Source: Macrostomum lignano
Taxonomy: Eukaryota
Direction: 5' to 3'
Assembly: GCA_002269645.1 (NCBI GenBank)
Contig: NIVC01000646.1
Location: 416,616 to 480,615, forward strand
Length of the DNA stretch: 64,000 nucleotides
Shown here piece by piece: positions 12,790 to 52,469 of the stretch. Position 1 is the first letter of the stretch. The number at the start of each line of letters is the position of its first letter. The position numbers were made by a program, and so were the translations under genes. Below the pieces are notes generated by a model. It made no database searches. It had not been told where the DNA came from and saw nothing but the letters and a program-made list of their open reading frames with translations.

Positions 12790-14470
12790 AAAATTGGGGG
12801 GCAATTTGGAAGAGAGGACAATCTAGGAGGCAATCTGGGGGGCAATCTGGGGGCAATATGGGGGCAATATGGGGGCAATCTGGGGGCAATCTGGGGGCAA
12901 TTTGGGAGAGGGACAATCTAGGAGGCAATCAGGGGGGGAAATCTGGGGGCAATCTGGGGGCAATCTGGGGGGGGCAATCTGGGGGCAATCTGGGGGCAAT
13001 CTGGGGGGGGGGCAATCTGGGGGGGGCAATCTGGGGGGCAATCTAGGGGGGGCAATCTGGGGGGGGCAATCTGGGGGGCAATCTGGGGGGCAATCTGGGG
13101 GGCAATCTGGGGGCAATCTGGGGGCAATCTGGGGGCAATCTGGGGGGGGCAATCTGGGGGGGGCAATCTGGGGGTTCAATCTGGGGGCAATCTGGGGGCA
13201 ATCTGGGGGGGCAATCTGGGGGGCAATCTGGGGGGGCAATCTGGGGGCAATCTAGGGGCAATCTGGGGGGGGCAATCTGGGGGGGCAATCTGGGGGGGCA
13301 ATCTGGGGGGCAATCTGGGGGGGCAATCTGGGGGGGCAATCTGGGGGCAATCTGGGGGCAATCTGGGGGCAATCTGGGGGCAATCTGGGGGCAATCTGGG
13401 GGCAATCTGGGGCTATCTGGGGGCTATCTGGGGGCAATCTGGGGGCAATCTGGGTGGCAATCTGGGGGCAATCTGGGGGGGGCAATCTGGGGGCAATCTG
13501 GGGGGGGCAATCTGAGGGCAATCTGGGTGGCAATCTGGGGGCTATCTGGGGGGGCAATCTGAATCTGGGGGGGGGCAATCTGGGGCAATCTAGGGGCAAT
13601 CTGGGGGCAATCTGGGGGGCAATCTAGGGGCAATCTGGGGGCAATCTGGGGGGGGGCAATCTGGGGGCAATCTGGGGCGCAATCTGGGGGGCAATCTGGG
13701 GGGGCAATCTGGAGGCGCAATCTGGGGGCAATCTGGGGGCAATATGGGGGCAATATGGGGGCAATCTGGGGGCAATTTGGGAGAGGGACAATCTAGGAGG
13801 CAATCAGGGGGGGATCTCGGGGCAATCTGGGGGGCAATCTGGGGGCAATCTGGGGGAAATCTGGGGGCAATCTGGGGGGGCAATCTGGGGGGGGCAATCT
13901 GGGGGGGGCAATCTGGGGGCAATCTGGGGCAATCTGGGGGGGCAATCTGGGGGGCAATCTGGGGGGGCAATCTGGGGGGCAATCTGGGGGCAATCTGGGG
14001 GCAATCTGGGGGCAATCTGCATGGGGGGCAATCTGGGGGGCAATCTGGGGGGCAATCTGGGGGGGCAATCTGGGGGGGCAATCTGGGGGGCAATCTGGGG
14101 GGCAATCTGGGGGCAATCTGGGGGCAATCTGGGGGCAATCTGGGGGGGCAATCTGGGGGGGGCAATCAGGGGGGGCAATCTGGGGGCAATCTGGGGGCAA
14201 TCTGGGGGGCAATCTGGGGGGCAATCTGGGGGGGCAATCTGGGGGGGCAATCTGGGGGCAATCTGTGGGCAATCTGGCGGCAATCTGGGGGTGGCAATCT
14301 GGGGGGGGCAATCTGGGGGGGGCAATCTGGGGGGGCAATCTGGGGGGCAATCTGGGGGCAATCTGGGGGCAATCTGGGGGCAATCTGGGGGGCAATCTGG
14401 GGGCAATCTGGGGGCAATCTGGGGGCAATCTGGGGCAATCTGGGGGCAATCTGGGGGGCACTCTGGGGAC
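12790..14470. repeat. G-run array (G4-8 CAATCT)n
   Basis: CAATCT alternates with G tracts of variable length over ~1.7 kb. Confidence 0.95.
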
Positions 14471-15206
14471 AATGTTAGAATTTCAGAACTTCCTGTGGCC
14501 CGCAATAACTATAGCTTATATTTCTGTTCAACATACTCTGCAAAATAATTTAACACAGAAAATCTGTTCTTCTACTCAGCAGTTCGAATCGAACTTGTTG
14601 TGGTTGAAAATTGCGGTTTGCACAATTATTAAAAGAAAGAACAACACGAAACGAATTGAGTGCATTCGAACTAACTAGATATGAAAAATGGAGCAGCATT
14701 ATCAAGAAGTCTAGTAACACCGAAGTTGTAGTGCAAAGTGGGTGATGCTCAATACAATAAAATTGGCCAAGCCAAGTTGTTCAAGCCATTAGGACCATGC
14801 TATGAAGTCGGTAATATTTTGGCCCAGTACTCCTGTACCTCACCGGAAATGAATCATGAATTACACCGCTGTCTAACAGTCAAGGATAAGCAACAGAAAA
14901 TAAATGTTTGATTGAGTGCAACATTTCGGCACAAAGTGCCACTGCAAACAGGTGAGTATAGTAGGAAGGTTGAGAAATTTGTCAGTTTAATGAGTACAAC
15001 GAACACACATGGAAAAAGCAAGATCGTTAACATATTCGATACATAAATCGTCACAGTAAAAGGAAACAGTTATAAATTTGTGGCAAAATGTTGCGGAATT
15101 GAAAGAGGTGCAAAAAAAAGAGTATTGCTTTCATTCTATCAGCGTAGTTAAAAAATGACCTTAAAGCAAGTGGCTCAAACCGCGAAGAGAGTAGGTGGAG
15201 GAGTGC

Positions 15207-15385
15207 GGCGTGGGGTGGGTGCAATGTGCAGGGATAGCAAAGCATGACTGTCCATCCACCAACTCTCCCAGCCAATCGGGGCCAACCAGCAATTAAACGG
15301 CGTGGGGTGGGTGCAGTGTGCAGGGATAGAAAAGCAAGGCTGTCTACCAACTCTTCCAGCCAATCAGAGCCGACCAGTACGCTCG
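15207..15385. repeat. Two-copy 92-bp direct duplication downstream of the FGF stop
   Basis: GGCGTGGGGTGGGTGCA...CAGCCAATC at 15207 and 15299. Confidence 0.8.
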
Positions 15386-15596
15386 TAATTAAAATGGCGT
15401 GAGGTCGGTGCTGGGGCGAGGCAAAAAGCAATGACCTATTGCCGAGCGCTGCATCTGAGGCTATTTAAGGCAAACAAGGACCAAAAAGGCACAACACAAT
15501 CCTATCAGCAAAATCCAAAGGGAATGAAAATAACTAGACTAGCCAAAATAGATACTTTAAATAGAACTAATTTCCGAATGAGTGAATCCAGTTCCT

Positions 15597-16865
15597 TCAT
15601 TCGCAGCCAATATAGTTGTAAAACTTAGGAAAAGATTTCCATTGTCTCCGCAATTTCTTCAACTGTGGCATTGTCAGAAGCCGCCGTCTCGCCCGCCTTG
15701 TCCGCTGGCACCTGCCGCCGGTCCTGGCTTCCAGCCGCAGCTTGCCGGCCCTGGCGTGCCGCACCGCCAGGGCGAAACTCACCGAGTCGTCCAGCCGGGC
15801 CAACCGCAAAGATTCTTCCACCTCGACCGCGGGCCGCCCGGCCGACTGCAGCCGCCAGCGCTCGCTCTTCTCCGTCCGGTGGCGCAGCAGTGCCTCGCGA
15901 ATTTTCGATCGCGACGCCAGGCTGATGTTCAGCGTCGAGCGCAGCGTCGCTACGAGGCTGCCGCCGCCGCCGCCGCCGTTAGATCGCAGCAGCCGCAGCA
16001 GCTCCTTTCGAGTCTGGCGACGCCTTCGCCGGCGCGCCCGCCGAGCCCGGTAGCCGCCAGCCGCCAGAGCCGGACAGACGCGCTCGGCCAGCAGGCTGGC
16101 CACCCTCGCCGACTCGAAGGCGAGCGTCAGCAGGTCGCGCCGGCAGTGAAGCTTCCGGCTACGCCGCAGACGACGCCGGAACACGCAGCCGCGGCGGCCC
16201 GTTCCAGCGTCGTCCAGAAAGGCCAGCGCGAGGTCCTTGTTGAAGTAGCGGTTCGCCAGCCTGACGGCCCGGTCTCCGGCTCGGGCGCGGAGTTTGGCGC
16301 GCAGCTGGCGCAGCTGGCGCCGAACCCGTCTGGTGAGCGCCGCTTTCTCCAGCGCGTGCGCCTCCGCGGCCGCCTTGGCAGCCGAGCAGCGCGCGTCAAC
16401 GTTGGCGCCGCCAGCGGCCTCGCTCTCTCTGAGACGCCGTCGAGTGGCCGAGTTCAGCGACTCGGTCTCCAAGCGCACCAGGCGGCCGGCGCCGATTTCC
16501 ACCTGTTCAGTCGGCCTCGTCTCGTTCCGGCGCGTCTTGTCCATCACAGTCCAGCGGAGACCGTCGGCGTCCACTTTGCGTCGCTCTTCCACCAGGAATA
16601 CGACTGACTTGGAGCGGCCGCGCAGCTCGCGCCCGTTCTGCGGATGGCTGTCGCTGATGCCGAGGTACCAGCGGCTTGCCGCCTTACGACTGCGCGTCCC
16701 ATTGCCGCCTCCTTTGACGGTAGCGTCCGGCAGGATGGCCCGGTAGAAGGTGGCCACGGTGAAGCGGCTGCTGGCGGGGCGGTGGCTCCGGTCTGGCAGT
16801 GGCAGGTCGGGCAGCAGCCGGCCGCGCCACAGGCAGTCCTCGGGCAGGCGGCCGGACTCGACTTT
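15597..16865 (-). CDS. FGF-like exon 3 (rest of core and basic tail)
   Basis: Part of ORF 15597..16907 after acceptor ccccgttgcag. GC-rich third codon positions continue nearly to the TGA stop. Confidence 0.85.
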   Translation of the reverse strand, partial: KVESGRLPEDCLWRGRLLPDLPLPDRSHRPASSRFTVATFYRAILPDATVKGGGNGTRSRKAASRWYLGISDSHPQNGRELRGRSKSVVFLVEERRKVDADGLRWTVMDKTRRNETRPTEQVEIGAGRLVRLETESLNSATRRRLRESEAAGGANVDARCSAAKAAAEAHALEKAALTRRVRRQLRQLRAKLRARAGDRAVRLANRYFNKDLALAFLDDAGTGRRGCVFRRRLRRSRKLHCRRDLLTLAFESARVASLLAERVCPALAAGGYRARRARRRRRRQTRKELLRLLRSNGGGGGGSLVATLRSTLNISLASRSKIREALLRHRTEKSERWRLQSAGRPAVEVEESLRLARLDDSVSFALAVRHARAGKLRLEARTGGRCQRTRRARRRLLTMPQLKKLRRQWKSFPKFYNYIGCE

Positions 16866-19800
16866 CTGCAACGGGGATTGGGGAGGTGGCCTTAACTGTA
16901 GATACATGTATAAGGTGCCTTATCTACGGAGTTTCTCTTGGATACAACTGCTTAGCAACGGGGCTTCCCTTAGATACACTTCTTACAAACAGGGACTAGT
17001 TTCGATGACGCAGATGTTGCAGCAGATTTTTAATAGGCATCTAAATAGAGGAACTGCGACATGATTGGCAAACTGCCAAATAACAGAGTGGTGCCAATTT
17101 TCTCATTGTCTGACGCCATCCTCAATTAGCCGCATCAATAAAAATGTTTAGAAATCGAATCCATAATCTACAAGTGTATAGCTGAATCCTCATACCGTTA
17201 TTGATGCCCAATTGATCAATTATGAATTATGAATTATGAATATGTTAGAAAATTATTGATTGTAAAGAAATTTAAATAGAGAACTTTTTTTGATTGATAA
17301 TTCTATGAAACTTTAAAACTTACATGACAAAGATACACTCGGACTGGCGTGAATGCAGTGCAGCCTATCCCTCTGCTGAGAGAGCCAGAATTGGGGTTGG
17401 GCGTGGATTGAACCTCCCGCTAAGAGAGACAGAATTGGGGTGGGCTTGGATGGAACCTCCCGCTAAGAGAGCCGGAATGGGGGTGGGCGTGGTTGAACCC
17501 TCCGCAGGAGAGCCGGAATTTGGGTGGGCGTGGATTGAACCTCCCGCTAAGAGAGCCAGAATTGGGGTGGGCGTGGATTGAATTTCCCGCTGAGAGAGCC
17601 AGAATTGGGGTGGGCGTTGATTGAACCTCCCGCTGAGAGAGCCGGAATTGGGGTGGGCGTGGTTGAACCCTCCGCAGGGACAGCCGGAATTGGGGTGGGC
17701 GTGGTTGAACCCCCCGCAGTGAGAGACAGAATTGGGGTGGGCGTGGATTGAACTTCCCGCTAAGAGAGATAGAATTGGGGTGGGCGTGGTTGAACCCCCC
17801 CCCCCGCAGGGAGAGCCAGAATGGAGTGAGGCGGATGGTAGTTAATGTACAAAGTTAATTACCGTGGTGTAGACATCCGCCAAGTTGTTCATGCAGATGT
17901 AGTGTTTCCCAAAATGGCTTTTGATTAAAAACTTAAATTCGCCTCTGTCCGAGGCCTTGTCGCCCGGCAGTTGTAGAGGCTGACCAGTGTTAAAGTTTAA
18001 CACCATCTGGACATTTAGCACTGGAAAATGTGAAATACGGGTTCAAGATTGCCGACTGTAAAAATCCGAAATTAAACTCATCGTTTTCAAAATGAATTAC
18101 TCAACTTTTTGTAGGCGGAAAAGCCTCGTTGAACTTCTCTACTACTTCGCATTTTGTTTAAGTTGGCAGCGTGCCAAAATGAGAGGAAGAATCTCCCCCC
18201 AAATATATCCTGAGTGGAGAATCCGCATAGGGTAGCAGGAGCGGAATGCGTGGGCGGTGGAGCCCTTGTGACTCAATACCCAATTGTGCATTCAATGGGA
18301 GCAGAACTGGACCAAGCAGTGTGAGGGGAGACAAAAGTAGTGCAGGCTAGAAACCAATTGGCTCGCTTCCAAGTTGGGATTAAAACCTGCATGAAGCTGG
18401 GATGATGTTCGCTCCTCTGCTACAAGTTGGCAGGCTGCCAGAACACGGGTAAATTTGTCTGAAAAATTGCCAGACAAAATAGAATACGGGTGGCAACGTA
18501 AATCTCTACTGCAGGCATTTTTATAGGCAGTCGGAAATTAATAATTAATCATTGCCGGCCTCAGCACGCATTTCCCATTCAATTTGATCAACAATATATA
18601 GAGTTGCGATTCCAAAAATTGTCGGCCACGTCGACTGCCGATATGTGGCGCAGAAAACTTTCTTATGGAGCTATTCGACTTGGTGTGCTGTTTGTGATGC
18701 TGTTTGTGGTGCTGTTTGTGGTGCTGTTTGTGATGCTGTTTGTGGTGCTGTTTGTGGTGCTGTTTGTGGTGCTGTTTGCGATACTGTTTGTGGTGCTGTT
18801 TGTGATGCTGTTTGTGGTGCTGTTTGTGATGCTGTTTGTGATGCTGTTTGTGGTGCTGTTTTTGATGCTGTTTGTGGTGCTGTTTGTGGTGCTGTTTGTG
18901 GTGCTGTTTGTGGTGCTGTTTGTGGTGCTGTTTGTGGTGCTGTTTGTGGTGCTGTTTGTGGTGCTGTTTGTGATGCTGTTTGTGGTGCTGTTTGTGATGC
19001 TGTTTGTGGTGCTGTTTGTGGTGCTGTTTGTGGTGCTGTTTGTGGTGCTGTTTGTGATGCTGTTTGTGGTGCTGTTTGTGATGCTGTTTGTGGTGCTGTT
19101 TGTGATGCTGTTTGTGATGCTGTTTGTGATGCTGTTTGTGGTGCTGTTTGTGGTGCTGTTTGTGGTGCTGTTTGTGATGCTGTTTGTGGTGCTGTTTGTG
19201 ATGCTGTTTGTGGTGCTGTTTGTGATGCTTTTTGTGGTGCTGTTTGTGATGCTGTTTGTGATGCTGTTTGTGATGCTGTTTGTGATGCTGTTTGTGGTGC
19301 TGTTTGTGGTGCTGTTTGTGGTGCTGTTTGTGGTGCTGTTTGTGGTGCTGTTTGTGGTGCTGTTTGTGGTGCTGTTGGTATTGCTAAAAATTGGGGCTGT
19401 TGCGGGGTGCCCAGTGGGCACTGCACAGTGTTGCAGAAGCTGGAGCACTCGAAGAGTTCAAGGCAGACAACTAATTGGGGTGAGCACTGACAGTCTGACA
19501 GACAGACAGACAGAAACTTGACAAGCTATAAAAACTCAAATATCTCGCTGACAGTTTCAAAGGGCCTTTCCAATGCACAGACACATAAAAACAAATATTT
19601 CTGTAGCTTCAAAAATCTTATTCGAATTTCAATAAATTTCAGACATTTGTTGAACTTTGAATCTGAAATTTACTGAGAGACTGTGAAAGAACTTTTGCCA
19701 AGTGCAGAGAAACTGAAGGAAGCTGAAAATCTGTACAGCAGTTCACTGTTCGTCATCAAAACAGCGATTGGTGAAGTTGAAATATGCTTATTGGACACTG

Positions 19801-21170
19801 CCTCAGCTTACGCAACTGAAAAATCTCACACTGCAACTCACACTGCAACTCGCACTGCAACTTGCACAGCATCTCACACTGCAACTCACACTGCAACTCG
19901 CACTGCAACTCACACTGCAACTCGCACTGCAACTCACACTGCAACTCACACTGCAACTCGCACTTCGCAACTCGCACTGCAACTCACACTGCAACTCACA
20001 CTGCAACTCACACTGCAACTCACACTGCAACTCACACTGCAACTCACACTGCAACTCACACTGCAACTCACACTGCAACTCACACTGCAACTCACACTGC
20101 AACTCGCACTGCAACTCACACTGCAACTCACACTGCAACTCACACTGCAACTCGCACTTCGCAACTCGCACTTCGCAACTCGCACTGCAACTCACACTGC
20201 AACTCACACTGCAACTCACACTGCAACTCACACTGCAACTCGCACTGCAACTCACACTGCAACTCACACTGCAACTCGCACTTCGCAACTCACACTGCAA
20301 CTCACACTGCAACTCACACTGCAACTCACACTGCAACTCACACTGCAACTCACACTGCAACTCACACTGCAACTCGCACTGCAACTCACACTGCAACTCA
20401 CACTGCAACTCGCACTGCAACTCGCACTTCGCAACTCACACTGCAACTCACACTGCAACTCACACTGCAACTCACACTGCAACTCACACTGCAACTCATA
20501 CTGCAACTCACACTGCAACTCATACTGCAACTCACACTGCAACTCGCACTTCGCAACTCACACTGCAACTCACACTGCAACTCACACTGCAACTCACACT
20601 GCAACTCACACTGCAACTCACACTGCATCTCACACTGCAACTCACACTGCATCTCACACTGCATCTCACACTGCAACTCACACTGCAACTTGCACTGCAA
20701 CTCACACTGCAACTTGCACTGCAACTCACACTGCAACTTGCACTGCAACTCACACTGCATCTCACACTGCATCTCACACTGCATCTCACACAGCAACTCT
20801 TACTGCAACTCACACTGATGAAGACACAGAAAGTACAGAAGGACCAAAGAAAGTTCACCGCCTCACCTGTCTCAGCCGTCCAGCCCTGAAACCGTTCGCT
20901 GCGCAGCCGACCCACCGAGCTCACGACCAGCGCCTCGCGCCTCTTAAAGTCGGCGCTATCGAAACCGCTGTTGCTCAGCGTCTCCATGGCCGCCTCGCCG
21001 ATGCTGAACCCAACTCGATGCGGACTGGCGCTTCGCCGTATCAGTTTGGCGCCGCCGGCGCTAGTAGGCGCTAATTCTAGCGCCTGCATTGCCGGTCTGG
21101 CGCCAGTGGATTTGATAGAAATTAAAATTATTAGAAGCAAAAGACTGCAAGGGTTCGGACCCGCCAGCAT
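15597..21170 (-). CDS. FGF8/17/18: Secreted fibroblast growth factor, FGF8/17/18-like, 3 exons (20867-21170, 17863-18020, 15597-16865), 576 aa, with long Arg-rich C-terminal extension
   Basis: Exons join in frame: 304+158+1269=1731 nt, intron phases 1 and 0. Donors ACAG|GTGAGG and ACG|GTAATT; acceptors ttttccag| and cgttgcag|. Signal peptide MLAGPNPCSLLLLIILISIKSTGA. Core motifs IKSHFGKHYICMN, EDCLW, RWYLGI and VVFL match FGF8-family YICMN / KDCVF / WYMAF / VHFM. Intron positions and phases match the FGF core. Confidence 0.82.
17379..17825. repeat. 44-bp minisatellite in FGF intron 2
   Basis: Unit contains GAATTGGGGTGGGCGTGG; about 10 copies. Confidence 0.92.
17863..18020 (-). CDS. FGF-like exon 2 (VLNVQMVL...FLIKSHFGKHYICMNNLADVYTT)
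   Basis: Absent from the ORF track. 158 nt, phase 1 in and phase 0 out, contains YICMN. Confidence 0.85.
18682..19377. repeat. 12-bp minisatellite in FGF intron 1
   Basis: (G[G/A]TGCTGTTTGT)n. Confidence 0.95.
19826..20815. repeat. 12-bp minisatellite in FGF intron 1
   Basis: (ACTGCAACTCAC)n. Confidence 0.95.
20867..21170 (-). CDS. FGF-like exon 1 (signal peptide and first strands)
   Basis: ATG at 21170, hydrophobic LLLLIILISI, consensus donor at 20866, phase 1. Confidence 0.75.
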
Positions 21171-21199: not shown

Positions 21200-21345
21200 C
21201 AACTTTGATAGAAAATTTGAGTCCCGAATCTGGGCTGCAAAACTTCAATGTGTCTCCGCTTTTTCGCCGAAAACTGCCCCCGTTTTATTTGCCGTCATGC
21301 CGTGGCGCGCGCCGGCTTCTGATTGGCTGGCCAGGGGTCCAAGCC
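21200..21345 (-). promoter_or_regulatory. Candidate FGF promoter
   Basis: CpG-rich patch (ggcgcgcgcc) and CCAAT box (plus-strand gattggc, ~21321) about 150 bp upstream of the ATG. Confidence 0.4.
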
Positions 21346-21429: not shown

Positions 21430-21735
21430 AATCATAAATAATAATTGCTTACACCACCTGCCCCAATTGGGCCAGATGTGCAACCGACAGCTCAGCCGCA
21501 GCTATTGCGCGGCGCATCTGAAGGCTGCGTACGGCTGTTCAGTCCAAGGACGGGGGAGTCGCCACAAACACCCTCAATTACCCCAGCTGGCACCCATTTT
21601 ACACCTGGGTGAACTGAAGCAATGCAGAGTTAAGTGTCTTGCTCGAGGACACAAATTGTTCCGGTGGGATCTGGACTCAAACCCCCGAACCTTCAAGTTG
21701 TCAGTCCGATGCTCCAACCACTGATCTAAAACCCT
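21430..21735 (-). mobile_element. tRNA-derived CORE-like SINE, copy 1
   Basis: Clearly similar to 52163-52469. Degenerate A/B boxes; central GTGTCCTCGAGCAAGACACTTAACTC...TGTAAAATGGG resembles the MIR/CORE domain. Confidence 0.8.
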
Positions 21736-22155
21736 CAACCTGAGATACCCCTCAGTCTGAACTATAGTTGAAGCCAAATCAATCAGAACCGAAGACGTAC
21801 ACGCAGAAACTGATATTAGCTAAGTGGCGAGCTAGAAAATTAAACCAGTTCTAAAATCTATTCATGAAATCAATTCATGGTTTGTATATTTTGTATTTAA
21901 TCTACCAATATTTAGATAAAATGGCTAATTGCATTTACGCTTGGTCACTTGTCAAACAAATTCAAGACTCAAGTGCCATTGTAAACAGTACTTTAAAAAA
22001 CAAAAATAATCGAAGACTAATTATAAAAATATATAGACTAAGAAAGCTCTGCTTTTGTAATAAGACACTTCTAAAAATGGATTAAAATGGTGCTGCGATT
22101 GTGGCGCAGGTTCGCAGAGTGGTTGTCAGCACGACCACCTACTGCGCTACAGTAG

Positions 22156-23720: not shown

Positions 23721-24715
23721 CTACTTGACCGCAAAGCCCTCCAGCTGCTCCTGCACCAGCAGCGCATGCAGCGGCATGTCCCAGTTGCGCCCGTAGTTCA
23801 ACTGGCTGAAGCCGGCGCCGTCGAGACTGGCCTCCGGCTTGTTCAGCAGGCGGCAGTCACAGAACAGCAGCGACCAGGCGGGCTGGCAGAGCCACTGGAC
23901 CAGTCGAGCCCAACGCCGAGTAGAGGCTACGTGCTCCAGAAAGATAAACACGCCGTTCTGCGGGATTGTCGATATCGCGCATAGAAACCAGCATGGAAAC
24001 CGCATAGCAACCAGTATGAAACGGCACCGAAACCAAGCAAAAAAACCACATAGCAACCAGTATAGAAGTCGCATAACAACCAGCATAAAAACCGCATAGC
24101 TACCGGCATAGAAACTGCATAACAACCAGCATAGAAACCGCAAAGAAACCGCATAGCAACCAGCATAGAAACCGCATGGCAACAGGGAGAGAGAGCACGC
24201 ACTGGCTTGAGCACGCGGGCAATCTCCCCCAACACTCGGTCGGTGTCCCGCACGGAGCACAGCACAAACGTGCCCACAACAGCGTCGAAAGATTCGTCGG
24301 GAAAAGCGTCGACCAGATCTTCGGCGCCGCGGACTAGGTGCCGCTCCAGCCGAATGCTCGGCCACCTGGCGACCTCGGACAGCAGGTAGGGCCGGGTTGC
24401 CAGACAGGGGTCCACAACGGACAGGAAGATGCGGCCGCGAAACGCGGCCGTCATGAAGGCGAAGTTCGCCCCGGACCCGCCGCCAACCTCCAGAACGCGG
24501 ATGAAGCGGCGCCCGGAGAATCTGTCGCCGAGGCAGGCGAACAGCTTCCGCTTCCGGTCCCAGCAGAGAGCGTTGTAAGCCCGGGAAATTCGGTCCATCA
24601 GGTGGGCGTACACCTCGGCGCGGTGGCGGCTGTACAGCAGGACCACGGCGCCGAGGAGGAACACCGCGGCGGCGATGGTTGATGATACAAGCGAGCAGTC
24701 AGACAGGTGCAACAT
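23721..24715 (-). CDS. METTL7: METTL7/TMT1-like SAM-dependent thiol methyltransferase, exons 24203-24715 and 23721-23957, 249 aa
   Basis: N-terminal membrane anchor; LEVGGGSGANF (motif I); DESFDAVVGTFVLCSV; VLKP|NGVFIFLEHV across a phase-0 intron. Confidence 0.92.
23985..24180. repeat. Degenerate ~23-bp repeat filling the METTL7 coding intron
   Basis: CATAGCAACCAGCATAGAAACCG-like units. Confidence 0.8.
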
Positions 24716-24744
24716 TGTGCTCAGGACCTTGCGGGTTGTTAGAG

Positions 24745-26257
24745 TGGGGGGTCAGGGTGCTGGAGTAGGGGTCAGAGTGTTGGAGTGGGGTCAGGGTGTT
24801 GCAGTGGGGTCAGGGTGTTGCAGTGGGGTCAGGGTGTTGGAGTGGGGGTTAGGGTGCTGGAGTGGGGGTTAGGGTGTTGGAGTGGGGTCAGGGTGTTGGT
24901 GGGGTCAGGGTGCTGGAGTAGGGGTCAGGGTGTTGGAGTGGGGTCAGGGTGCTGGAGTAGGGGTCAGGGTGTTGGAGTGGGGTCAGGGTGCTGGAGTAGG
25001 GGTCAGGGTGTTGGAGTGGGGTCAGGGTGCTGGAGTAGGGGTCAGGGTGTTGGAGTGGGGTCAGGGTATTGGAGTGGGGTCAGGGTGCTGGAGTAGGGGT
25101 CAGGGTGTTGGAGTGGGGTCAGGGTGCTGGAGTAGGGGTCAGGGTGTTGGAGTGGGGTCAGGGTATTGGAGTGGGGTCAGGGTGCTGGAATAGGGGTCAG
25201 GGTGTTGGATGTTGGTGGGGTCAGGGTGCTGGAATAGGGGTCAGGGTGTTGGAGTGGGGTCAGGGTGCTGGAGTAGGGGTCAGGGTGTTGGAGTGGGGTC
25301 AGGGTATTGGAGTGGGGTCAGGGTGCTGGAGTAGGGGTCAGGGTGTTGGAGTGGGGTCAGGGTGCTGGAGTAGGGGTCAGGGTGTTGGAGTGGGGTCAGG
25401 GTATTGGAGTGGGGTCAGGGTGCTGGAATAGGGGTCAGGGTGTTGGATGTTGGTGGGGTCAGGGTGCTGGAATAGGGGTCAGGGTGTTGGAGTGGGGTCA
25501 GGGTGCTGGAGTGGGGTCAGGGGGCTGGAATAGGGGTCAGGGTGTTGGAGTGGGGTCAGGGTGCTGGAGTAGGGGTCAGGGTGTTGGAGTAGGGGTCAGG
25601 GTGTTGGAGTGGGGTCAGGGTATTGGAGTGGGGTCAGGGTGCTGGAATAGGGGTCAGGGTGTTGGAGTGGGGTCAGGGTGCTGGAGTAGGGGTCAGGGTG
25701 TTGGAGTGGGGTCAGGGTATTGGAGTGGGGTCAGGGTGCTGGAATAGGGGTCAGGGTGTTGGATGTTGGTGGGGTCAGGGTGCTGGAATAGGGGTCAGGG
25801 TGTTGGAGTGGGGTCAGGGTGCTGGAGTGGGGTCAGGGGGCTGGAATGGGGGTCAGGGTGTTGGAGTGGGGTCAGGGTGCTGGAGTAGGGGTCAGGGTGT
25901 TGGAGTAGGGGTCAGGGTGTTGGAGTGGGGTCAGGGTATTGGAGTGGGGTCAGGGTGCTGGAATAGGGGTCAGGGTGTTGGATGTTGGTGGGGTCAGGGT
26001 GCTGGAGTAGGGGTCAGGGTGTTGGAGTGGGGTCAGGGTGCTGGAGTAGGGGTCAGGGTGTTGGAGTGGGGTCAGGGTATTGGAGTGGGGTCAGGGTGCT
26101 GGAATAGGGGTCAGGGTGTTGGATGTTGGTGGGGTCAGGGTGCTGGAATAGGGGTCAGGGTGTTGGAGTGGGGTCAGGGGGCTGGAATGGGAGTCAGGGT
26201 GTTGGAGTGGGGTCAGGGTGCTGGAGTAGGGGTCAGGGTGCTGGAGTGGGGGTCAGG
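24745..26257. repeat. G-rich ~20-bp minisatellite with higher-order blocks
   Basis: GGGGTCAGGGTG(T/C)TGGAGT units; variant GGATGTTGGT recurs at 140-320 bp intervals. Confidence 0.95.
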
Positions 26258-41900: not shown

Positions 41901-44169
41901 AATTTCTCATAACCCACCTGAATCGCTCATAACCCACCTGAATCGCTCATAACCCACCTGAATCGCTCATAGCCCACCTGAATCACCATTACCTAACCAG
42001 GAATGGCTCAGCCATTAGACCCCGCACTCACCTAGCACAGTGAACACCGAGCCAAGCATCAGCAGGCAGAAGGTTGGCGATCGCAGCATCCCAGGTGACA
42101 GCATTTTGCGCAGCGCCGATCTGGCCGGAGCCGCTGGCCGCCCGGCGTCGACCGGCACCGTGGTGGCCGAGCGATAGAAATCTCGGCCACCGGCGCCACC
42201 GCCCCCGCCAGCAGCGCCGGGGGCCCGCGTGGCCCGACAGTACTCGGCAACGTGGCGCAGCGAGCCGGAATGGAATACGTCTTTGCGATTGAGCGGTCGG
42301 AGCACTTCCCGACGCAGCGAACGGCCGATAGCCTCGCGAACCTGCGGCAGCAATAAAGCATTTTAAATAAAACAGTCACTGTGGCTGTTTTGTTCAGGGT
42401 CACCATGCTACCGTTTACTGTGACTGTTTTGTTAAGGGTCTCAATGCTACCGTTCACTGTGACTGTTTTGTTCAGGGTCACCATGTTACCGTTCACTGTG
42501 ACTGTTTTGTTCAGGGTCACCATGTTACCGTTCACTGTGACTGTTTTGTTCAGGGTCTCCATGCTACCATTCACTGTCAAATATGGCCTAGGTACCCTCT
42601 AGATAGCTAGAGCGCCCACCTCCTCGGTGATTTCAGTCGAGCCGCTCAGCAGAGCCATCGCAGCCCCGTTGATTGCCGCCGGCCCGCCAGCTGCCGAAGT
42701 TGCCGTGCCGGCTAGAGACGTGCCCGACGCAAAATTCGATTGATCAGGCGTCGGAACTTCGGAATTGAGCGCCGTGTGCGGCTGCAGCGGCGCGCCGACC
42801 AGATGCGGCTGATTCGCTGCCGGATCATTGCTGCTGACGCCGCCGACTGCTAGAGAAGTTTGGCTTTGGGCGAAGTCGCCGACGCCTGCGCCGCCGCTAA
42901 TGCCTCCGCTCACGCCGCTGACGCCGCCGCCTCCGCCTCTGACGGTAGCAGCCAGCTGAGACAGGCTGCCCTTGGCTGTGGCGGCCGCCTCGGCCAGGAA
43001 GCTGTGCCTGCTAGTTAAACGACGCGATCCTGCGCCGGAAGCAGCCGCAGCCGCTGTCGCAGCAGAATAGCCGGGCGTTTTCCTGCGCAGAACATTCTCG
43101 GCTATGCGGTGGATCGCCTCCATGCTGAGCATTGGCCGGTCATCAAAGTCTGGGGGCGGCGGCTCCACCCGATTAGCCGTAGTGATGATCCAGCCGTTTA
43201 GGGAGCCCTGCGTTGGTTAGTGAGAGATTAGGGCTGCCTCTGCGCACCGGTTTTATGGGGAATCTAAGGACGGGCTAGTGGGGAATTTAAGCATTGGCTA
43301 GTGGGGAATCTGAGCATTGGATAGTGGGGAATCTGAGCATTGGCTAGTGGGGAATCTGAGCATTGGATAGTGGGGAATCTGAGCATTGGCTAGTGGGGAA
43401 TCTGAGCATTGGATAGTGGGGAATCTGAGCATTGGCTAGTGGGGAATCTGAGCATTGGCTTATGGGGAATCTGAGGACTGGCTAGTGGGGTATCTGAGCA
43501 CTGGCTACTGGGGAATTTGGGCACTGGCTAGTGGGGAATCTGAGGACTGGCTAGTGGGGAATCTGAGCACTGGCTACTGGGAATCTGAGGACTGACTCAT
43601 GGGAAATCTGAGGATTGGCTAGAGAGGAATCTGAGGACTGGCTTATGGGGAATTTCAGGACTGGCTCATGGGTAATCTGAGGACCGGTTCTAATTGCTAA
43701 AATTTAAATTTTAAGGCCGCGCACAAAAAGTCGCCCACCGCTCACCTGGCTAATATTTCTCTCACGCTTCTTATTCTCCACCAGCTTCCGCATGATGTTC
43801 CCCTTGACGCGCGGCTCGCCGCGGGCCAGCCGGCGCAGCTCCCGCTTAGCCAGGATGTCGTAGTAGCGATCCAGCGGCATCAGCAGGGAGCCGGCGACAA
43901 CGCAGTTGAACAGCACACCGGCCAGCACCATGAGGGCGCCTCGCCAGGTCAGCTGGTCGACCAGCTGATCGGTGGCCAGGGCTACGGCGGCCGTGCCGAC
44001 GCCACTGCCGCAGACGCCGATGCCGGTGGCGATGGCTCGTCGACGCTCGAACCAGAAGCCGACAGTGACTACGGCTGGCAGGTAGACTAGGCCTAGGCTG
44101 GCGCCTGCGGGCGGAGCCGGGGTGGACGGCTACAGACACTGAGACAGACAGCCAGACAGACAGCCAGAC

Positions 44170-47500: not shown

Positions 47501-49104
47501 TGACAGATTTACTAGAATCAGAGTGACAGACCTACATGAACCAGAGTGACAGATTTACTAGAACCTGAGTGACAGATCTACATGATCCAGAGTGACAGAT
47601 TTACTAGAACCTGAGTGACAGATTTACTAGAATCAGAGTGACAGACCTACATGAACCAGAGTGACAGATTTACTAGAACTTGAGTGACAGATCCACATAA
47701 ATAAGTGACAGATATCAGTCAACAGTACACATGACGAGCGACTCACCGCCAAGGACGCCGAACACGAACACGAATGCATAATAGTTGGTGACAAAGGAGG
47801 CCCCGCAGAAGACGGCAGCGGAGGCCGCGGCGCCCAGCATAATGATGGGCCGGCAGCCGAATGTGTTGGCCAAGGCGGAGCTCGTGGGGCCTGGGGCAGG
47901 GTCGGTGGGAGAGGCTTTTTGATATGCACTGCAACCATTAGCTTATGGACATGACCGGAGCAATACTCGTAAGAAGTAATCATACAGTTATTATATTCTC
48001 GCAATAATTATTGACCATCTGAGAATGCAAAGTAAATAGTAATAGTAAATAATACAGAAATAAAGATCGGGGCGATTATCATTGTTTTGTACATATAGTG
48101 ACACATCAACAAAGACAGACAGACAGACAGGCAGGCAGATAGACAGGCAGGCAGGCAGGCAGACAGACAGACACTAAGACAGACAGACGGACACTAACAC
48201 AGACACTAAGACAGACAGACACTAAGACAGACAGACGGACACTAACACAGACACTAAGACAGACACTAAGAGAGACACTAAGGCAGACACTAAGACAGAC
48301 ACTAAGACAGACACTAAGACAGACACTAAGACAGACACTAAGACAGACACTAAGACAGACACTAAGACAGACACTAAGAGAGACACTAAGACAGACACTA
48401 AGAGAGACACTAAGACAGACACTAAGAGAGACACTAAGACAGACACTAAGAGAGACACTAAGACAGAGAGACACTAAGACAGACACTAAGAGCGACACTA
48501 AGACAGAGAGACGGACACTAACACAGACACTAAGACAGACACTAAGACAGACACTAAGAGAGACACTAAGACAGACACTAAGAGAGACACTAAGACAGAG
48601 AGACGGACACTAAGACAGACACTAAGACAGACACTAAGAGAGACACTAAGACAGAGAGACACTAAGACAGACACTAAGAGCGACACTAAGACAGAGAGAC
48701 GGACACTAACACAGACACTAAGACAGACACTAAGACAGACACTAAGAGAGACACTAAGACAGACACTAAGAGAGACACTAAGACAGAGAGACGGACACTA
48801 AGACAGACACTAAGACAGACACTAAGAGAGACACTAAGACAGAGAGACACTAAGACAGACACTAAGAGCGACACTAAGACAGAGAGACGGACACTAACAC
48901 AGACACTAAGACAGACACTAAGACAGACACTAAGAGAGACACTAAGACAGACACTAAGAGAGACACTAAGACAGAGAGACGGACACTAACACAGACACTA
49001 AGATAGACACTAACACAGACACTAAGACAGACACTAAGACAGACACTAAGACAGACACTAAGACAGACAGACACTAAGACAGACACTAAGACAGACAGAC
49101 ACTA

Positions 49105-51198: not shown

Positions 51199-51750
51199 GA
51201 CTGACTAACTAACTAACTAACTAACTGACTAACTAACTAACTGACTAGATAACTGACTAACTGAGTAATTAACTAACTAACTAGCTAAAAATCTAACCAA
51301 CAGTACTAGCTATTTAACTAACAATTTAACTAATGATTAAGGAGCTAATGAACTCCAATTGAACTCACCAAACAGCATGTAGACGCCAAACACGGTGCTG
51401 CCGATCAGAGACAGCTCTGCCGGCCCCCTGCCAGCAAAGGATTCGCTAATCCGGTCGCGAGCTACGCTAAAAAACGAATAGCAAAAGCCGTCAACAAGGC
51501 CGTGGCAGAGGAATGCGCCAAGCACAATGAACCAAGCGTAGCCCTTGTCCGGCGGGCTGGGAGGCCCGGCCGCGTCCACACCAGCCGGTGGCAGCGACGC
51601 TGTCGCCTGGGGAGGATTGGGATTCGGCGAAGTAAAATAACTGTAGGATTCTGCCGCTGACTGCGGCGGCTGCTGATGCTGAGGGTCTGGTGGTTCGGCA
51701 ACCACCTGGCCAGCAGCTGCAGGCGGCTGCTGCTGCTGCGGATTCGTCAT
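37587..51750 (-). CDS. SLC16: SLC16/monocarboxylate-transporter family MFS protein: exons 51369-51750, 47747-47890, 43746-44104, 42620-43207, 42032-42341, 41234-41356, 39058-39204, 37587-38179 (2646 nt, 881 aa)
   Basis: [11 protein letters not shown] (MCT motif 1), [56 protein letters not shown]. Long central loop. All seven introns are GT-AG with matching phases. Confidence 0.93.
38215..39050. repeat. (CAGA)n filling the last SLC16 intron
   Basis: Direct reading. Confidence 0.95.
40085..40375. repeat. Four-copy 53-83-bp repeat with CCAAT-like motifs
   Basis: GACGAAACTCAGCCTAGGGG recurs four times. Confidence 0.8.
41415..41985. repeat. 20-bp minisatellite (sense strand ...TTCAGGTGGGT...)
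   Basis: Unit ACCCACCTGAATCGCTCATA, about 28 copies. Confidence 0.95.
42375..42580. repeat. 39-bp repeat, about 5 copies, filling an SLC16 intron
   Basis: Period 39 (42378 to 42417). Confidence 0.9.
43255..43690. repeat. 23-bp minisatellite
   Basis: CTAGTGGGGAATCTGAGCATTGG units. Confidence 0.9.
44135..44515. repeat. (CAGA)n just upstream of an SLC16 acceptor
   Basis: Direct reading. Confidence 0.95.
45022..46540. repeat. 25-bp purine minisatellite
   Basis: Unit GATGGAGGGTGAAGAGTTGAGAGGA. Confidence 0.95.
47230..47715. repeat. ~23-bp minisatellite
   Basis: CAGAGTGACAGATTTACTAGAAC-like units. Confidence 0.9.
48110..49275. repeat. (CAGA)n grading into 12-bp GACACTAAGACA with 188-bp higher-order copies
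   Basis: Identical ORFs at 48498 and 48686 show the 188-bp period. Confidence 0.92.
50018..51335. repeat. (ACTA/ACTG)n compound tetranucleotide array
   Basis: Direct reading; starts about 30 nt after the SLC16 exon 1 donor. Confidence 0.95.
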
Positions 51751-52162
51751 GATCGAGAAGTTCAGCAGCTCTGAGTCTTATTTTTGCAGAATTTAAAACT
51801 GAAAAATTTAATTTAAAAAGAACTTATTTAGCGAATAAACTTGGGCCAAAAAGAATCATGAACTCATTTAGTAATGTTCTATTTTTAGAAACCTGACGAG
51901 TACTGGCCTAAGTACTTGCAACTTAAAATTAGTATTAAGTAAGTACAACAATAGTCCACTGTCTCGACAAGTTGAAATAGACTATAAATAGAATCATATT
52001 GTCATATTCTTTATGTACAGTGACAATACATATCCAAGAAAAGTCTGCTCACTTCTATATCTAGTGTGCTGTGTGCTGTGTTTGACACAATGCACACTAC
52101 ATAGTATGTTCTCTTAAAATTGCACAATACCTAAATTAGTTTTCCATTATGCAACATATACT

Positions 52163-52469
52163 AATCATAATAATTGATTACTGATTACACCTGCCCTATT
52201 GGGCACATGTGCAACCGACCGCTCAGCCGCAGCTATTGCGCGGCGCATCTGAAGGCTATGTACGGCTGTTCAGTCCAAGAACTGGGGGGTCGCCACACAC
52301 CCTTAATTACCCCATTGAATGCTGGCACCCATTTTACAGCTAGATGAACTGAAGCAATGCAGAGTTGAGTGTCTTGCTCAAGGACACAAATTGTTCCAGT
52401 GGGATTGGGAATCGAACCCACAACCTTCAAGTTGTGAGTCCGACGCTCTAACCACTAGGCTACAACCCC
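52163..52469 (-). mobile_element. tRNA-derived CORE-like SINE, copy 2
   Basis: A box TAGCCTAGTGG (52452-52462), B box GGTTCGATTCC (52408-52418), CORE-like segment ~52328-52387, AT-rich tail. Confidence 0.85.

What the first reader, a model, noticed from the sequence alone, without database searches (positions are those of the whole stretch)
15597..16575. ~325-aa, ~21% arginine tail on the FGF
After the core ends (VVFLVEERRK) the frame continues about 325 aa. I counted 69 Arg by hand, in clusters such as RRRLRRSRK, RARRARRRRRR and RTRRARRR, plus a poly-Gly hinge. Vertebrate FGF8-family tails are short. Drosophila Pyramus/Thisbe have long processed tails and C. elegans LET-756 has nuclear-targeting sequence. 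Inference: the tail may tether the ligand to heparan sulfate, be released by furin (many R-x-x-R sites), or act as a nuclear or nucleic-acid-binding moiety.
Basis: partly seen in the sequence, partly recalled or inferred. Interest (0 to 1): 0.72.

Follow-up and report, generated by a model that had tools for sequence, protein, structure and literature searches.

The report
Conserved basic tail on flatworm FGF-like ligand
The 325-residue, 21% arginine tail is real coding sequence: it ends a three-exon gene for a secreted, very divergent FGF-like protein, and an unnamed protein of the flatworm Macrostomum lignano keeps the same tail, so it is a conserved domain whose function is still unknown.

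Summary
Observation confirmed. The frame runs 325 codons past VVFLVEERRK (16574..15600, minus strand) with 69 Arg (21.2%), the named Arg clusters and a Gly6.

The tail is coding. It is stop-free in only 0.3% of dinucleotide shuffles. GC3 is 0.62-0.93 in one frame throughout. Codon usage fits only that frame.

Arginine richness itself is mostly composition. Shuffles give 17.5±1.9% Arg, and the gene is 69% G+C.

An exhaustive HMMER search found one relative, M. lignano PAA71187.1 (607 aa, "hypothetical protein"), at E=9e-24. It is collinear through core and tail to the last motif (FPxFY..C). The tail alone scores z=11.6 against shuffles (z=6.8 with K/R masked). Three cysteines, one N-x-S sequon and three multibasic clusters are shared, and net charge is about +50 in both. 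Intron positions and phases match.

This gave a full model: exon 1 (21170-20867, with a predicted signal peptide), exon 2 (18020-17863) and exon 3 (16865-15597), 576 aa.

FGF identity is plausible but below threshold. Pfam gives 14-18 bits against a cut-off of 24. hhalign gives 86% over β5-β12. The M. lignano core against FGF8 gives z=10.8.

The function of the tail is inferred, not shown. Matrix retention and/or convertase processing is the most likely reading.

The parts
21322..21326 (-). CCAAT box (within CCAGCCAATCAG) about 155 nt 5' of the start codon. A possible promoter element.
   Evidence: Read directly from the sequence. Not tested.
20867..21170 (-). Exon 1 (coding part): ATG, predicted signal peptide MLAGPNPCSLLLLIILISIKS, then about 80 aa. 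Ends at the donor ACAG|gtgagg, phase 1.
   Evidence: It is the best, though on its own non-significant, tblastn match of M. lignano residues 29-88 in the window (E=0.62). The phase matches exon 2 and the M. lignano exon 1/2 junction. The aligned RRS..G..G.A..L motif is.
18021..20866 (-). Intron 1 (2846 nt), mostly 12-nt minisatellites.
17863..18020 (-). Exon 2: (V)LNVQMVLNFNTGQ...EFKFLIKSHFGKHYICMNNLADVYTT. Acceptor ttttccag|TG (phase 1), donor ACG|gtaatt (phase 0). Holds the best FGF-like stretch (YICMN).
   Evidence: tblastn with the M. lignano protein starts exactly at the acceptor; same junctions in M. lignano.
16866..17862 (-). Intron 2 (997 nt), containing a 43-nt minisatellite.
16575..16865 (-). 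Exon 3, first part: the last third of the FGF-like core (KVESGRLPEDCLWRG...SRWYLGI...VVFLVEERRK). It has two loop insertions and a shared N-G-T/N-S-T sequon. Acceptor ttgcag|AAA, phase 0.
15600..16574 (-). The tail: 325 aa, 69 Arg, net charge +52, six Cys (three conserved), no internal repeat.
16275..16349 (-). Basic block 1 (tail 76-100, EKAALTRRVRRQLRQLRAKLRARAG). RQLRQLR is identical in M. lignano, and both species have an R-x-[KR]-R here.
16137..16199 (-). Basic block 2 (tail 126-146, GRRGCVFRRRLRRSRKLHCRR). It is largely specific to the window and ends at conserved Cys144.
15984..16052 (-). Basic block 3 (tail 175-197, YRARRARRRRRRQTRKELLRLLR). M. lignano has a multibasic cluster at the same place.
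15960..15977 (-). Gly6, encoded by (GGC)6. It lies where the M. lignano gene has a 341-344-nt intron.
15921..15929 (-). N-I-S sequon (tail 216-218), aligned with N-V-S in M. lignano.
15681..15737 (-). Basic block 4 (tail 280-298, RLEARTGGRCQRTRRARRR), aligned with RVRRRRQRRQRRQRRLRHR in M. lignano.
15600..15635 (-). Conserved C-terminal motif SFPKFYNYIGCE (M. lignano DFPSFYFDLRCNE). It lies in the A+T-richer last 20 codons.
15597..15599 (-). Stop codon TGA.

Best explanation
The tail is the conserved C-terminal domain of a secreted, highly divergent FGF-like protein. It is known so far only from this genome and from the flatworm Macrostomum lignano.

The gene has three coding exons. The last exon encodes the final third of the FGF-like β-trefoil and, without interruption, the whole tail.

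The tail is not compositional junk. Its order of hydrophobic, cysteine and basic residues is kept between the two species. Predictions make it mostly α-helical, and it carries about +50 net charge concentrated in four blocks.

Most likely mechanism (inferred, not shown):
1. The pre-protein enters the secretory pathway through its signal peptide.
2. The polybasic helical tail binds sulfated glycosaminoglycans or other polyanions of the cell surface and matrix. This keeps the ligand near its source.
3. Proprotein convertases can cut at the conserved multibasic clusters to free a smaller, diffusible FGF-like core.

This is the logic shown experimentally for Drosophila Thisbe, Pyramus and Branchless.

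The very high arginine share, as opposed to lysine, is a by-product of the 69% G+C, CpG-rich composition of this gene.

The confidence given covers the whole statement, including the inferred mechanism. That the tail is a real, conserved coding domain I hold at about 0.9.
For: Shown here:
- Coding: the tail is stop-free in 0.3% of dinucleotide shuffles. GC3 is 0.62-0.93 in one frame from the core through the tail. The codon-usage log-likelihood, trained on homology-supported exons of the same window, is positive only in this frame, for both core and tail.
- Not repeat-derived: there is no internal repeat and no second copy in the window.
- Homologue: there is one hit among 1.84 billion representatives, E=9e-24, aligned over query residues 1-442 of 474. 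It is M. lignano PAA71187.1/PAA64592.1.
- Tail conservation: the MAFFT alignment is collinear to the C-terminus. Tail against tail scores 149 against 51.6±8.4 for shuffles (z=11.6), with 30% identity, compared with 38% for the part before the tail.
- Conservation beyond basic residues: in columns without K/R, 59 of 188 residues are identical against 17.3±3.8 by chance. With K/R masked, z=6.8.
- Shared features: Cys at alignment columns 68, 149 and 381; the NIS/NVS sequon; R-x-[KR]-R clusters in three common zones.
- Charge: net +52 here and +50 in M. lignano. M. lignano has GC3 0.61 and uses R 15% plus K 7%.
- Gene structure: identical intron positions and phases.
- Secretion: signal-peptide-like N-terminus in both proteins.
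- FGF-like core.
- Helical prediction of the tail, at low confidence.

From the literature:
- Thisbe and Pyramus (748 and 766 aa) are secreted as cleaved N-terminal fragments. Their FGF domain alone signals, and the Thisbe C-terminus limits activity (PMC2923630).
- Branchless is cut by Furin1 in the Golgi (PMC6504889).
Against: - No transcript, protein or binding data exist for either gene. The M. lignano model is an annotation only.
- There are only two species, so there is no dN/dS. The two M. lignano copies differ at 5 of 1824 coding bases, and the window against M. lignano is saturated.
- No conserved multibasic site lies directly after the core. The window has EERRK where M. lignano has PYRPA, so a clean 'core release' site is not evident.
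- The conservation of hydrophobic residues and cysteines fits a folded domain with a specific partner at least as well as a mere polybasic tether.
- Both AlphaFold models are low confidence (pLDDT 37).
- FGF membership is below Pfam's threshold. The N-terminal third of the trefoil (β1-β4) is not recognisable, so the 'ligand' premise is itself uncertain.
- Exon 1 rests on a weak match (E=0.62) plus splice logic.
Confidence: 0.45

Rival explanations
1. The tail is an independently folded helical domain, stabilised by disulfides among its conserved cysteines. It has a specific partner, for example a co-receptor, the FGF-like core itself (as an inhibitory pro-domain), or a second copy (dimerisation). 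On this reading the positive charge is secondary.
For: - Non-basic positions are conserved: 31% identity against 9% by chance, and z=6.8 with K/R masked.
- Three aligned cysteines, plus a fourth pair five columns apart.
- A conserved terminal FPxFY..C motif.
- Long predicted helices.
- The Thisbe C-terminus limits ligand activity (PMC2923630).
Against: - No Pfam or PDB relative of the tail, as a single sequence or as a two-sequence profile.
- Tail pLDDT is mostly below 60.
- A +50 net charge on a compact domain would be unusual without a polyanionic partner.
Confidence: 0.25
2. The tail is a nuclear or nucleolar targeting and nucleic-acid-binding module. On this reading the protein acts partly inside cells, as reported for C. 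elegans LET-756 and for FGF3 or high-molecular-weight FGF2 (recalled from my own knowledge).
For: - Runs such as RARRARRRRRRQTRK and RTRRARRR resemble nuclear or nucleolar localisation signals.
- Net charge +52.
- LET-756 is a 425-aa FGF with an extended C-terminus (PMC2923630 gives its size. Its nuclear targeting is from my own knowledge).
Against: - A strongly hydrophobic N-terminal signal sequence in both species.
- Shared N-glycosylation sequons in a core loop and in the tail.
- Conserved cysteines, which fit an oxidising, lumenal route.
Confidence: 0.1
3. The tail is non-functional read-through. On this view a G+C-rich stretch stays open by chance or by codon bias, the gene is decaying, and arginine richness simply mirrors CGN-rich DNA.
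For: - Shuffled DNA of the same composition already gives 17.5% Arg.
- The complementary frame on the plus strand (15582-16607) is open too.
- An off-frame of the neighbouring methyltransferase exon (23724-24698) is also a 325-aa Arg-rich ORF.
- The window's core is more divergent from FGFs than the M. lignano core: z of 1.5-3 against up to 10.8.
Against: - Only 0.3% of shuffles are stop-free.
- The codon signal is specific to one frame.
- Above all, the tail is collinear with and significantly similar to the M. lignano tail, right up to the residues next to the stop codon.
Confidence: 0.04
4. The protein is not an FGF at all. On this view it belongs to a flatworm-specific secreted family whose β-rich N-terminal part only resembles the FGF trefoil, so the tail should not be read in terms of FGF biology.
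For: - Pfam scores are below the cut-off in both species.
- A two-sequence profile finds no FGF in the PDB.
- Foldseek gives nothing significant.
- β1-β4 do not align.
Against: - hhalign gives 85.6%, E=5.6e-6, over FGF columns 46-124 with the YxxMN, EC.F and WY[LV][GA] landmarks in register.
- The M. lignano core against FGF8/17 gives z of 10-11, and BLASTP gives E=1e-5.
- A loop-trimmed construct reaches 28.4 bits to the end of the Pfam model (hand-edited).
- A phase-0 intron lies a few residues before the EC motif, where by my recollection FGF genes have their second intron.
Confidence: 0.2

Closest known systems
Macrostomum lignano hypothetical protein BOX15_Mlig028597g1 (PAA71187.1; near-identical copy PAA64592.1)
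   Same: - The only detectable relative.
- Same architecture: signal peptide, N-terminal region of about 75 aa, FGF-like core, long basic tail.
- Same intron positions and phases.
- 38% identity before the tail and 30% within it.
- Same cysteines, sequon, basic clusters and terminal motif.
   Different: - Its tail is 368 aa, with R 15% and K 7%, against R 21% and K 4% here.
- Its gene has GC3 0.61, against 0.81 here.
- It has an extra intron in the tail where the window has Gly6.
- It has 12 more residues after the terminal Cys.
- It is unannotated, with no Pfam domain on record.
Drosophila Thisbe and Pyramus (FGF8-like ligands of Heartless)
   Same: - An N-terminal signal peptide and an FGF domain, followed by a C-terminal extension of several hundred residues.
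- The extension has multibasic, furin-type motifs and N-glycosylation sites.
- The FGF domain is related to the FGF8 subfamily (PMC2923630).
   Different: - The fly tails are about 500 aa, low-complexity or repeat-rich and partly glycosylated (PMC2923630). They are not reported as Arg-rich helical domains.
- I did not compare the sequences directly. Neither fly protein came up in the searches.
- Cleavage is shown for the fly proteins and only inferred here.
Drosophila Branchless
   Same: A large FGF (770 aa) that is cut by Furin1 in the Golgi before release. The cleavage controls sorting and range (PMC6504889).
   Different: - The cleavage studied there removes an N-terminal part.
- It did not come up in the searches.
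- No experimental data here.
C. elegans LET-756
   Same: An invertebrate FGF of intermediate length (425 aa) with an extended C-terminus (PMC2923630).
   Different: - It is not known to be cleaved (PMC2923630).
- Its nuclear targeting is from my own knowledge and was not checked.
- The flatworm proteins have a clear signal peptide and lumenal-type features.
Vertebrate FGF8/17/18 and FGF23
   Same: - The core landmarks YICMN, DC[VL][FW] and W[YF][ML][AG] align.
- FGF23 is cut at an R-x-x-R site by subtilisin-like convertases (PMC2923630).
   Different: - The vertebrate proteins are about 200-250 aa with short tails.
- The flatworm core carries two loop insertions, and its N-terminal third is unrecognisable.
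Basic C-terminal retention motifs of VEGF-A long isoforms and of PDGF (my own knowledge, not checked here)
   Same: A secreted growth factor whose basic C-terminal stretch binds heparan sulfate and limits diffusion, with proteolysis releasing a diffusible form.
   Different: - Those motifs are tens of residues long, not 325.
- They belong to unrelated folds, and there is no homology.

Membership tests
FGF family (Pfam PF00167, β-trefoil growth factors) | The sequence reaches the Pfam gathering score (24 bits) for the FGF domain. | tested here: not met
   - Exons 2+3: 18.2 bits, E=2.7e-3.
- Full 576-aa model: 14.0 bits, E=0.053.
- M. lignano: 12.6 bits.
- Only profile positions 46-70/76 are matched.
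- A construct with two loops cut out by hand reaches 28.4 bits over positions 47-124. That is an edited sequence, not a natural one.
FGF family (Pfam PF00167, β-trefoil growth factors) | Profile-profile similarity to bona fide FGF cores. | tested here: inconclusive
   - hhalign of the two-species profile against six vertebrate FGF cores gives probability 85.6%, E=5.6e-6, 78 columns, FGF columns 46-124 only.
They were checked only by their Pfam scores of 145-160 bits.
- M. lignano core against FGF8 gives z=10.8 and against FGF17 z=10.3. The window core gives z of 1.5-3.0.
- BLASTP of M. lignano against FGF8 gives E=1e-5 over 59 residues.
FGF family (Pfam PF00167, β-trefoil growth factors) | A complete 12-strand β-trefoil fold. 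| tested here: inconclusive
   - AlphaFold2 with one or two sequences gives pLDDT 37, with β-strands but no confident fold.
- Foldseek against the PDB finds nothing at E<0.1. β-trefoils (IL-1, FGF1, lectins) appear only among the noise hits.
- β1-β4 are not aligned by any method.
FGF family (Pfam PF00167, β-trefoil growth factors) | A sequence relative among solved FGF structures. | tested here: not met
   phmmer and a two-sequence profile against all PDB chains give no FGF at E up to 10.
FGF family (Pfam PF00167, β-trefoil growth factors) | A conserved intron before the E/D-C-x-F strand (the second intron of FGF genes). | tested here: inconclusive
   A phase-0 intron lies 9 codons before the Cys of PEDCLW, in both the window and M. 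lignano. That canonical FGF genes have their second intron at the equivalent place is from my own memory and was not checked with a tool.
FGF family (Pfam PF00167, β-trefoil growth factors) | Binds and activates an FGF receptor tyrosine kinase. | not testable with these tools
   This needs recombinant protein and a receptor assay.
FGF8 subfamily (FGF8/17/18, Thisbe/Pyramus) | Groups with FGF8/17/18 rather than with other FGFs. | tested here: inconclusive
   The M. lignano core scores higher against FGF8/17/18 (z=10.8, 10.3, 6.5) than against FGF1/2/9 (z=3.1-4.5). The window core shows no such preference. No phylogeny was made.
Long-tailed, convertase-processed invertebrate FGFs (Thisbe/Pyramus/Branchless type) | A signal peptide plus a C-terminal extension of several hundred residues with multibasic motifs. 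| tested here: met
   - Hydrophobic N-terminus MLAGPNPCSLLLLIILISIKS.
- A 325-aa tail.
- Nine overlapping R-x-[KR]-R motifs, against 3.6±1.8 in residue shuffles.
- Three cluster zones are shared with M. lignano.
- No signal-peptide predictor was available, so the signal peptide is judged by eye.
Long-tailed, convertase-processed invertebrate FGFs (Thisbe/Pyramus/Branchless type) | The tail is homologous to the fly tails. | not tested
   The fly sequences were never fetched or compared directly. Indirectly, no relative other than M. lignano was found for the ORF, the spliced exon 2+3 model or the two-species profile, and the tail alone has no Pfam or PDB match.
Long-tailed, convertase-processed invertebrate FGFs (Thisbe/Pyramus/Branchless type) | The precursor is actually cleaved and the core is secreted. 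| not testable with these tools
   This needs tagged expression and western blots.

The most novel reading that the evidence does not exclude
Macrostomorph flatworms have their own, so far unrecognised FGF-type ligand. Flatworm genomes were said in 2019 to lack canonical FGF ligands (PMC6426264). In this ligand a conserved, cysteine-containing, +50-charged helical domain of 325-370 residues has become an obligatory partner of the trefoil. That would make it a new growth-factor pro-domain or retention domain with no relative elsewhere. Its processing would set the range of FGF signalling in an animal that regenerates from stem cells.
Probability: 0.3. Interest if true: 0.7.

Novelty: new variant of a known kind. 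Interest (0 to 1): 0.55.

Why it matters
FGF receptors are well studied in flatworm stem cells and brains, but their own ligands have been elusive. A 2019 study stated that canonical FGF ligand genes had not been identified in free-living flatworm, trematode or cestode genome projects (PMC6426264). One planarian gene, Djfgf, was reported in 2020 (cited in PMC8662385).

This finding does three things:
- It gives a name to a "hypothetical protein" of the transgenic model M. lignano.
- It shows that the protein has a second-species counterpart.
- It shows that the long basic tail is as much a part of the conserved protein as the FGF-like core.

That makes a concrete question testable in a tractable animal: does a flatworm FGF-like ligand need a polybasic pro-domain for retention, processing or range?

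It is also a caution for genome scans. In G+C-rich exons, 17-20% arginine comes free with the composition, so it is conservation, not arginine content, that carries the signal.

Tried and rejected
- ORF alone against Pfam, the PDB and the 5.8-billion-protein word-indexed search: nothing. The word index missed the 31%-identical M. lignano protein, which the exhaustive HMMER search then found.
- A profile of the window plus M. lignano against the same database found only M. lignano again.
- Tail profile against the PDB: nothing. Core profile against the PDB: no FGF.
- An early exon 1 candidate (MQVLIPTWKRANWF..., about 18392-18279) and a possible frameshifted 'PDG' reading just upstream of exon 2 (SAILNPYFTFSSAKCPDGVKL*): dropped. 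They added nothing to the Pfam score. The M. lignano gene structure pointed to the acceptor at 18020 and to exon 1 at 21170-20867.
- Pfam scan of all three minus-strand frames of the non-repeat parts of 17.9-22.2 kb: no extra FGF piece.
- dN/dS between the two M. lignano copies: only 5 differences in 1824 nt, so it is uninformative.
- Synteny between the window and the two M. lignano loci: only repeat-to-repeat hits.
- Species identification: a neighbouring methyltransferase exon found no relative above 49% identity. The window is therefore not M. lignano, and its species stays unknown.
- AlphaFold2 (single sequence, then two-sequence alignment) and Foldseek: low confidence, no usable fold.
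- Helical hydrophobic moment of the tail against shuffles: no difference, 0.68 against 0.67.
- The bacterial promoter/terminator scan is irrelevant for a eukaryote and found nothing.
Full report
**1. The observation**

The minus-strand ORF 15597..16907 is 436 aa. After VVFLVEERRK it runs for 325 more codons (16574..15600) to a TGA. There are 69 Arg (21.2%), mostly CGG and CGC codons. The clusters RRRLRRSRK, RARRARRRRRR and RTRRARRR and a Gly6 are all present.

**2. Chance or coding?**

- The tail DNA is 69% G+C with CpG not depleted.
- Dinucleotide shuffles of the tail carry 6.1 stops on average, and only 0.3% are open.
- GC3 stays at 0.75-0.93, falling to 0.62 only in the last 40-codon window. 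It exceeds GC1 and GC2 in one and the same frame, from the splice acceptor through the core and the whole tail.
- I trained a codon-usage log-likelihood on about 500 codons of homology-supported exons from the same window. It is positive only for this frame, at +0.16 bit/codon in the core and +0.12 in the tail. The other five frames are negative.
- The plus-strand ORF 15582-16607 is the exact complementary-codon frame. It is open because TTA, CTA and TCA are rare sense codons, and it scores negative.
- The tail has no internal repeat and no second copy in the window.

Arginine richness itself is a weak signal. The shuffles translate to 17.5±1.9% Arg, and every frame of the region gives 12-22%. 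An off-frame of the neighbouring methyltransferase exon is also a 325-aa Arg-rich ORF.

What does exceed a residue shuffle is the clustering. R-x-x-R occurs 24 times against 14.4, and R-x-[KR]-R 9 times against 3.6. Four blocks of +9 to +12 charge alternate with neutral, Ala/Leu-rich blocks. The net charge is +52.

**3. The gene**

- The G+C-rich block begins exactly at a good acceptor, cccgttgcag|AAAGTC at 16865, phase 0.
- About 1 kb upstream on the same strand lies ...EFKFLIKSHFGKHYICMNNLADVYTT, followed by ACG|gtaatt.
- Joining the two gives a sub-threshold Pfam FGF match across the junction: 18.2 bits, E=2.7e-3, against a cut-off of 24.
- The ORF alone has no Pfam, PDB or database match.

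**4. The decisive result**

An exhaustive phmmer search of 1.84 billion cluster representatives with the spliced exon 2+3 product returned a single hit, P0024. It had E=9.1e-24 and 31% identity, with query residues 1-442 aligned to residues 99-528 of a 607-aa protein.

P0024 is Macrostomum lignano PAA71187.1, "hypothetical protein BOX15_Mlig028597g1". It has a near-identical second copy, PAA64592.1. There is no Pfam domain on record for it.

The alignment is collinear through the core and through the entire tail. It reaches the last residues: SFPKFYNYIGCE* here against DFPSFYFDLRCNE... in M. lignano. So even the A+T-richer last 20 codons are conserved.

Tail against tail:
- The local score is 149, against 51.6±8.4 for composition-preserving shuffles (z=11.6).
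- Identity is 30% in the tail, against 38% for the part before the tail.
- The window tail against the M. lignano pre-tail, used as a control, gives z=-0.4.

The similarity is not only basic residues:
- In columns with no K/R on either side, 59 of 188 residues are identical, against 17.3±3.8 by chance.
- With K/R masked, z=6.8.

Shared features of the two tails:
- RQLRQLR, identical in both.
- Cysteines at alignment columns 68, 149 and 381, with a further pair five columns apart.
- An N-I-S / N-V-S sequon.
- R-x-[KR]-R clusters in three common zones.

The M. lignano tail has R 15.2% and K 7.1% with net charge +50 and GC3 0.61. The window tail has R 21.2% and K 4.3% with net charge +52 and GC3 0.81. 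The charge is the conserved quantity. The extra arginine tracks G+C content.

**5. Gene structure**

In M. lignano the coding exons cover residues 1-98, 98-153, 153-440 and 440-607. The first intron is phase 1 (AATG|gtgagc ... ttgcag|CT). The second is phase 0 (GTG|gtaaga ... atccag|ATG).

The window has the same two junctions in the same phases.

The M. lignano N-terminus led to exon 1 of the window at 21170-20867. Its features are:
- An ATG.
- A hydrophobic signal-type sequence, MLAGPNPCSLLLLIILISIKS.
- A weak but collinear match (RRS.S..G...G.A..L), with E=0.62 on its own.
- A consensus donor, ACAG|gtgagg, in phase 1.

The three exons give a 576-aa product with no frame problem.

The M. lignano tail has one more intron (341-344 nt, with in-frame stops). 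It sits at FEGGRK|PKV, exactly where the window has (GGC)6 = Gly6.

Both introns of the window gene are packed with minisatellites.

**6. Is it an FGF?**

Against:
- No natural sequence passes Pfam's threshold.
- A two-sequence profile finds no FGF in the PDB.
- The AlphaFold2 models are poor (pLDDT 37) and Foldseek finds nothing significant.
- The first third of the trefoil is not recognisable.

For:
- hhalign of the two-species profile against six vertebrate FGF cores gives 85.6% probability and E=5.6e-6 over FGF columns 46-124. The landmarks KFLIKS..YICMN, PEDCLW, FY and WYLGI...FL are in register. The two insertions fall in loops.
- With those loops removed by hand, Pfam gives 28.4 bits to the end of the model.
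- The less diverged M. lignano core scores z=10.8 against FGF8 and z=10.3 against FGF17, compared with 3-4.5 for FGF1, 2 and 9. BLASTP gives E=1e-5.
- The phase-0 intron sits a few codons before the EC strand. By my recollection that is where FGF genes have their second intron.

My reading is that this is a very divergent FGF-like protein, probably of the FGF8 type. I put the probability at about 0.75-0.8, and I do not consider membership proven.

**7. What the tail does**

Nothing here measures function. These features constrain it:
- Signal peptide in both species.
- Shared sequons in a core loop and in the tail.
- Conserved cysteines.
- About +50 net charge, concentrated in blocks.
- Multibasic clusters at shared places.
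- Helical prediction.
- No conserved cleavage site immediately after the core.

The best-supported model is a secretory pro-protein. Its polybasic helical tail holds it on sulfated matrix or cell surfaces, and convertases can trim it. This parallels Thisbe, Pyramus and Branchless, where cleavage, sufficiency of the FGF domain and an activity-limiting C-terminus were shown experimentally (PMC2923630, PMC6504889).

The main rival is a specifically folded interaction or pro-domain, and the two are not exclusive. A primarily nuclear role is less likely given the lumenal-type features. Non-coding read-through is effectively excluded by the conservation.

**8. Novelty**

A 2019 paper stated that canonical FGF ligand genes had not been identified in free-living flatworm, trematode or cestode genome projects (PMC6426264). 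A planarian gene, Djfgf, followed in 2020 (cited in PMC8662385; the paper itself is not held).

I found no paper on the M. lignano protein or on a basic FGF tail in flatworms. The library is incomplete, so this is not proof of absence.

I class the finding as a new variant of a known kind: a long-tailed invertebrate FGF-like ligand whose tail is a distinct, conserved, cysteine-bearing polybasic domain without relatives.

**9. Limits**

- Only two species are available.
- There is no expression evidence.
- The window's species is unknown. It is not M. lignano, because a neighbouring methyltransferase exon finds nothing above 49% identity.
- Exon 1 is supported only by weak similarity plus splice logic.

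Noticed in passing
window 17375-17800, 18685-19376, 19825-20817: Both introns of the FGF-like gene are largely minisatellites. There is a 43-nt unit x10 in intron 2. Intron 1 has two 12-nt arrays (x58 and x82), which give long spurious ORFs in several frames.
   Followed up: partly
window 12819-14468: About 138 copies of an 11-12-nt unit, CAATCTGGGGGG, lie 1.1 kb 3' of the gene. All frames on both strands are open across it.
   Followed up: no
window 15960-15977 and L001 24097-24440: The window's Gly6 is a (GGC)6 microsatellite. It sits exactly where the M. lignano orthologue has an extra 341-344-nt intron (FEGGRK|PKV). This suggests intron loss or gain at an indel-prone spot.
   Followed up: partly
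window 15206-15377 and about 15463 (+ strand); 21322-21326 (- strand): Two 88-92-nt direct repeats each carry CCAGCCAATC(A/G)G and are followed by TATTTAAGG. They lie just 3' of the gene and point antisense into exon 3. The same CCAGCCAATCAG lies about 155 nt 5' of the gene's ATG. This could be an antisense promoter or a dispersed element. The antisense ORF 15582-16607 has no coding signal.
   Followed up: partly
window 23930-24751 (-) and 23724-24698 (-): A class-I methyltransferase exon (PF08241, 41.9 bits; best database relative only 49% identical). Its downstream part runs into a 23-nt repeat that stays in frame. The +1 frame of the same exon is a 325-aa Arg-rich ORF, which is a useful control for composition-driven Arg-rich ORFs.
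   Followed up: partly
window 43707-44129 (-), also 42602-43216, 47718-47942, 51340-51777 (-): Exons of an MFS transporter. PF07690 scores 34 bits on the 43.7-kb exon, and the others are assigned by eye only. One exon carries a long Ala/Gly/Ser-rich low-complexity insert.
   Followed up: partly
window 52398-52470 (-), 52236-52454 (-), 21577-21819 (-): A tRNA-Val(CAC) gene (Rfam 38.6 bits; ARAGORN). There are also tRNA-derived SINE-like stretches whose translations read ...KV.GF.S....ICVLEQDT..., one of them inside intron 1's upstream flank.
   Followed up: no
window 54252-54827 (-): A G+C-rich 192-aa ORF in an A+T-rich region. By eye it looks like the C-terminal part of a LINE ORF2. There is no Pfam match at E<=0.01.
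   Followed up: partly
L001 and L002 (M. lignano NIVC01001181.1 and NIVC01001737.1): The two M. lignano copies differ at only 5 of 1824 coding bases and at about 0.8% of intron positions. This fits the recent genome duplication reported for this species (PMC5704211). Intron 1 is 12.6 kb in one copy and 17.5 kb in the other.
   Followed up: partly
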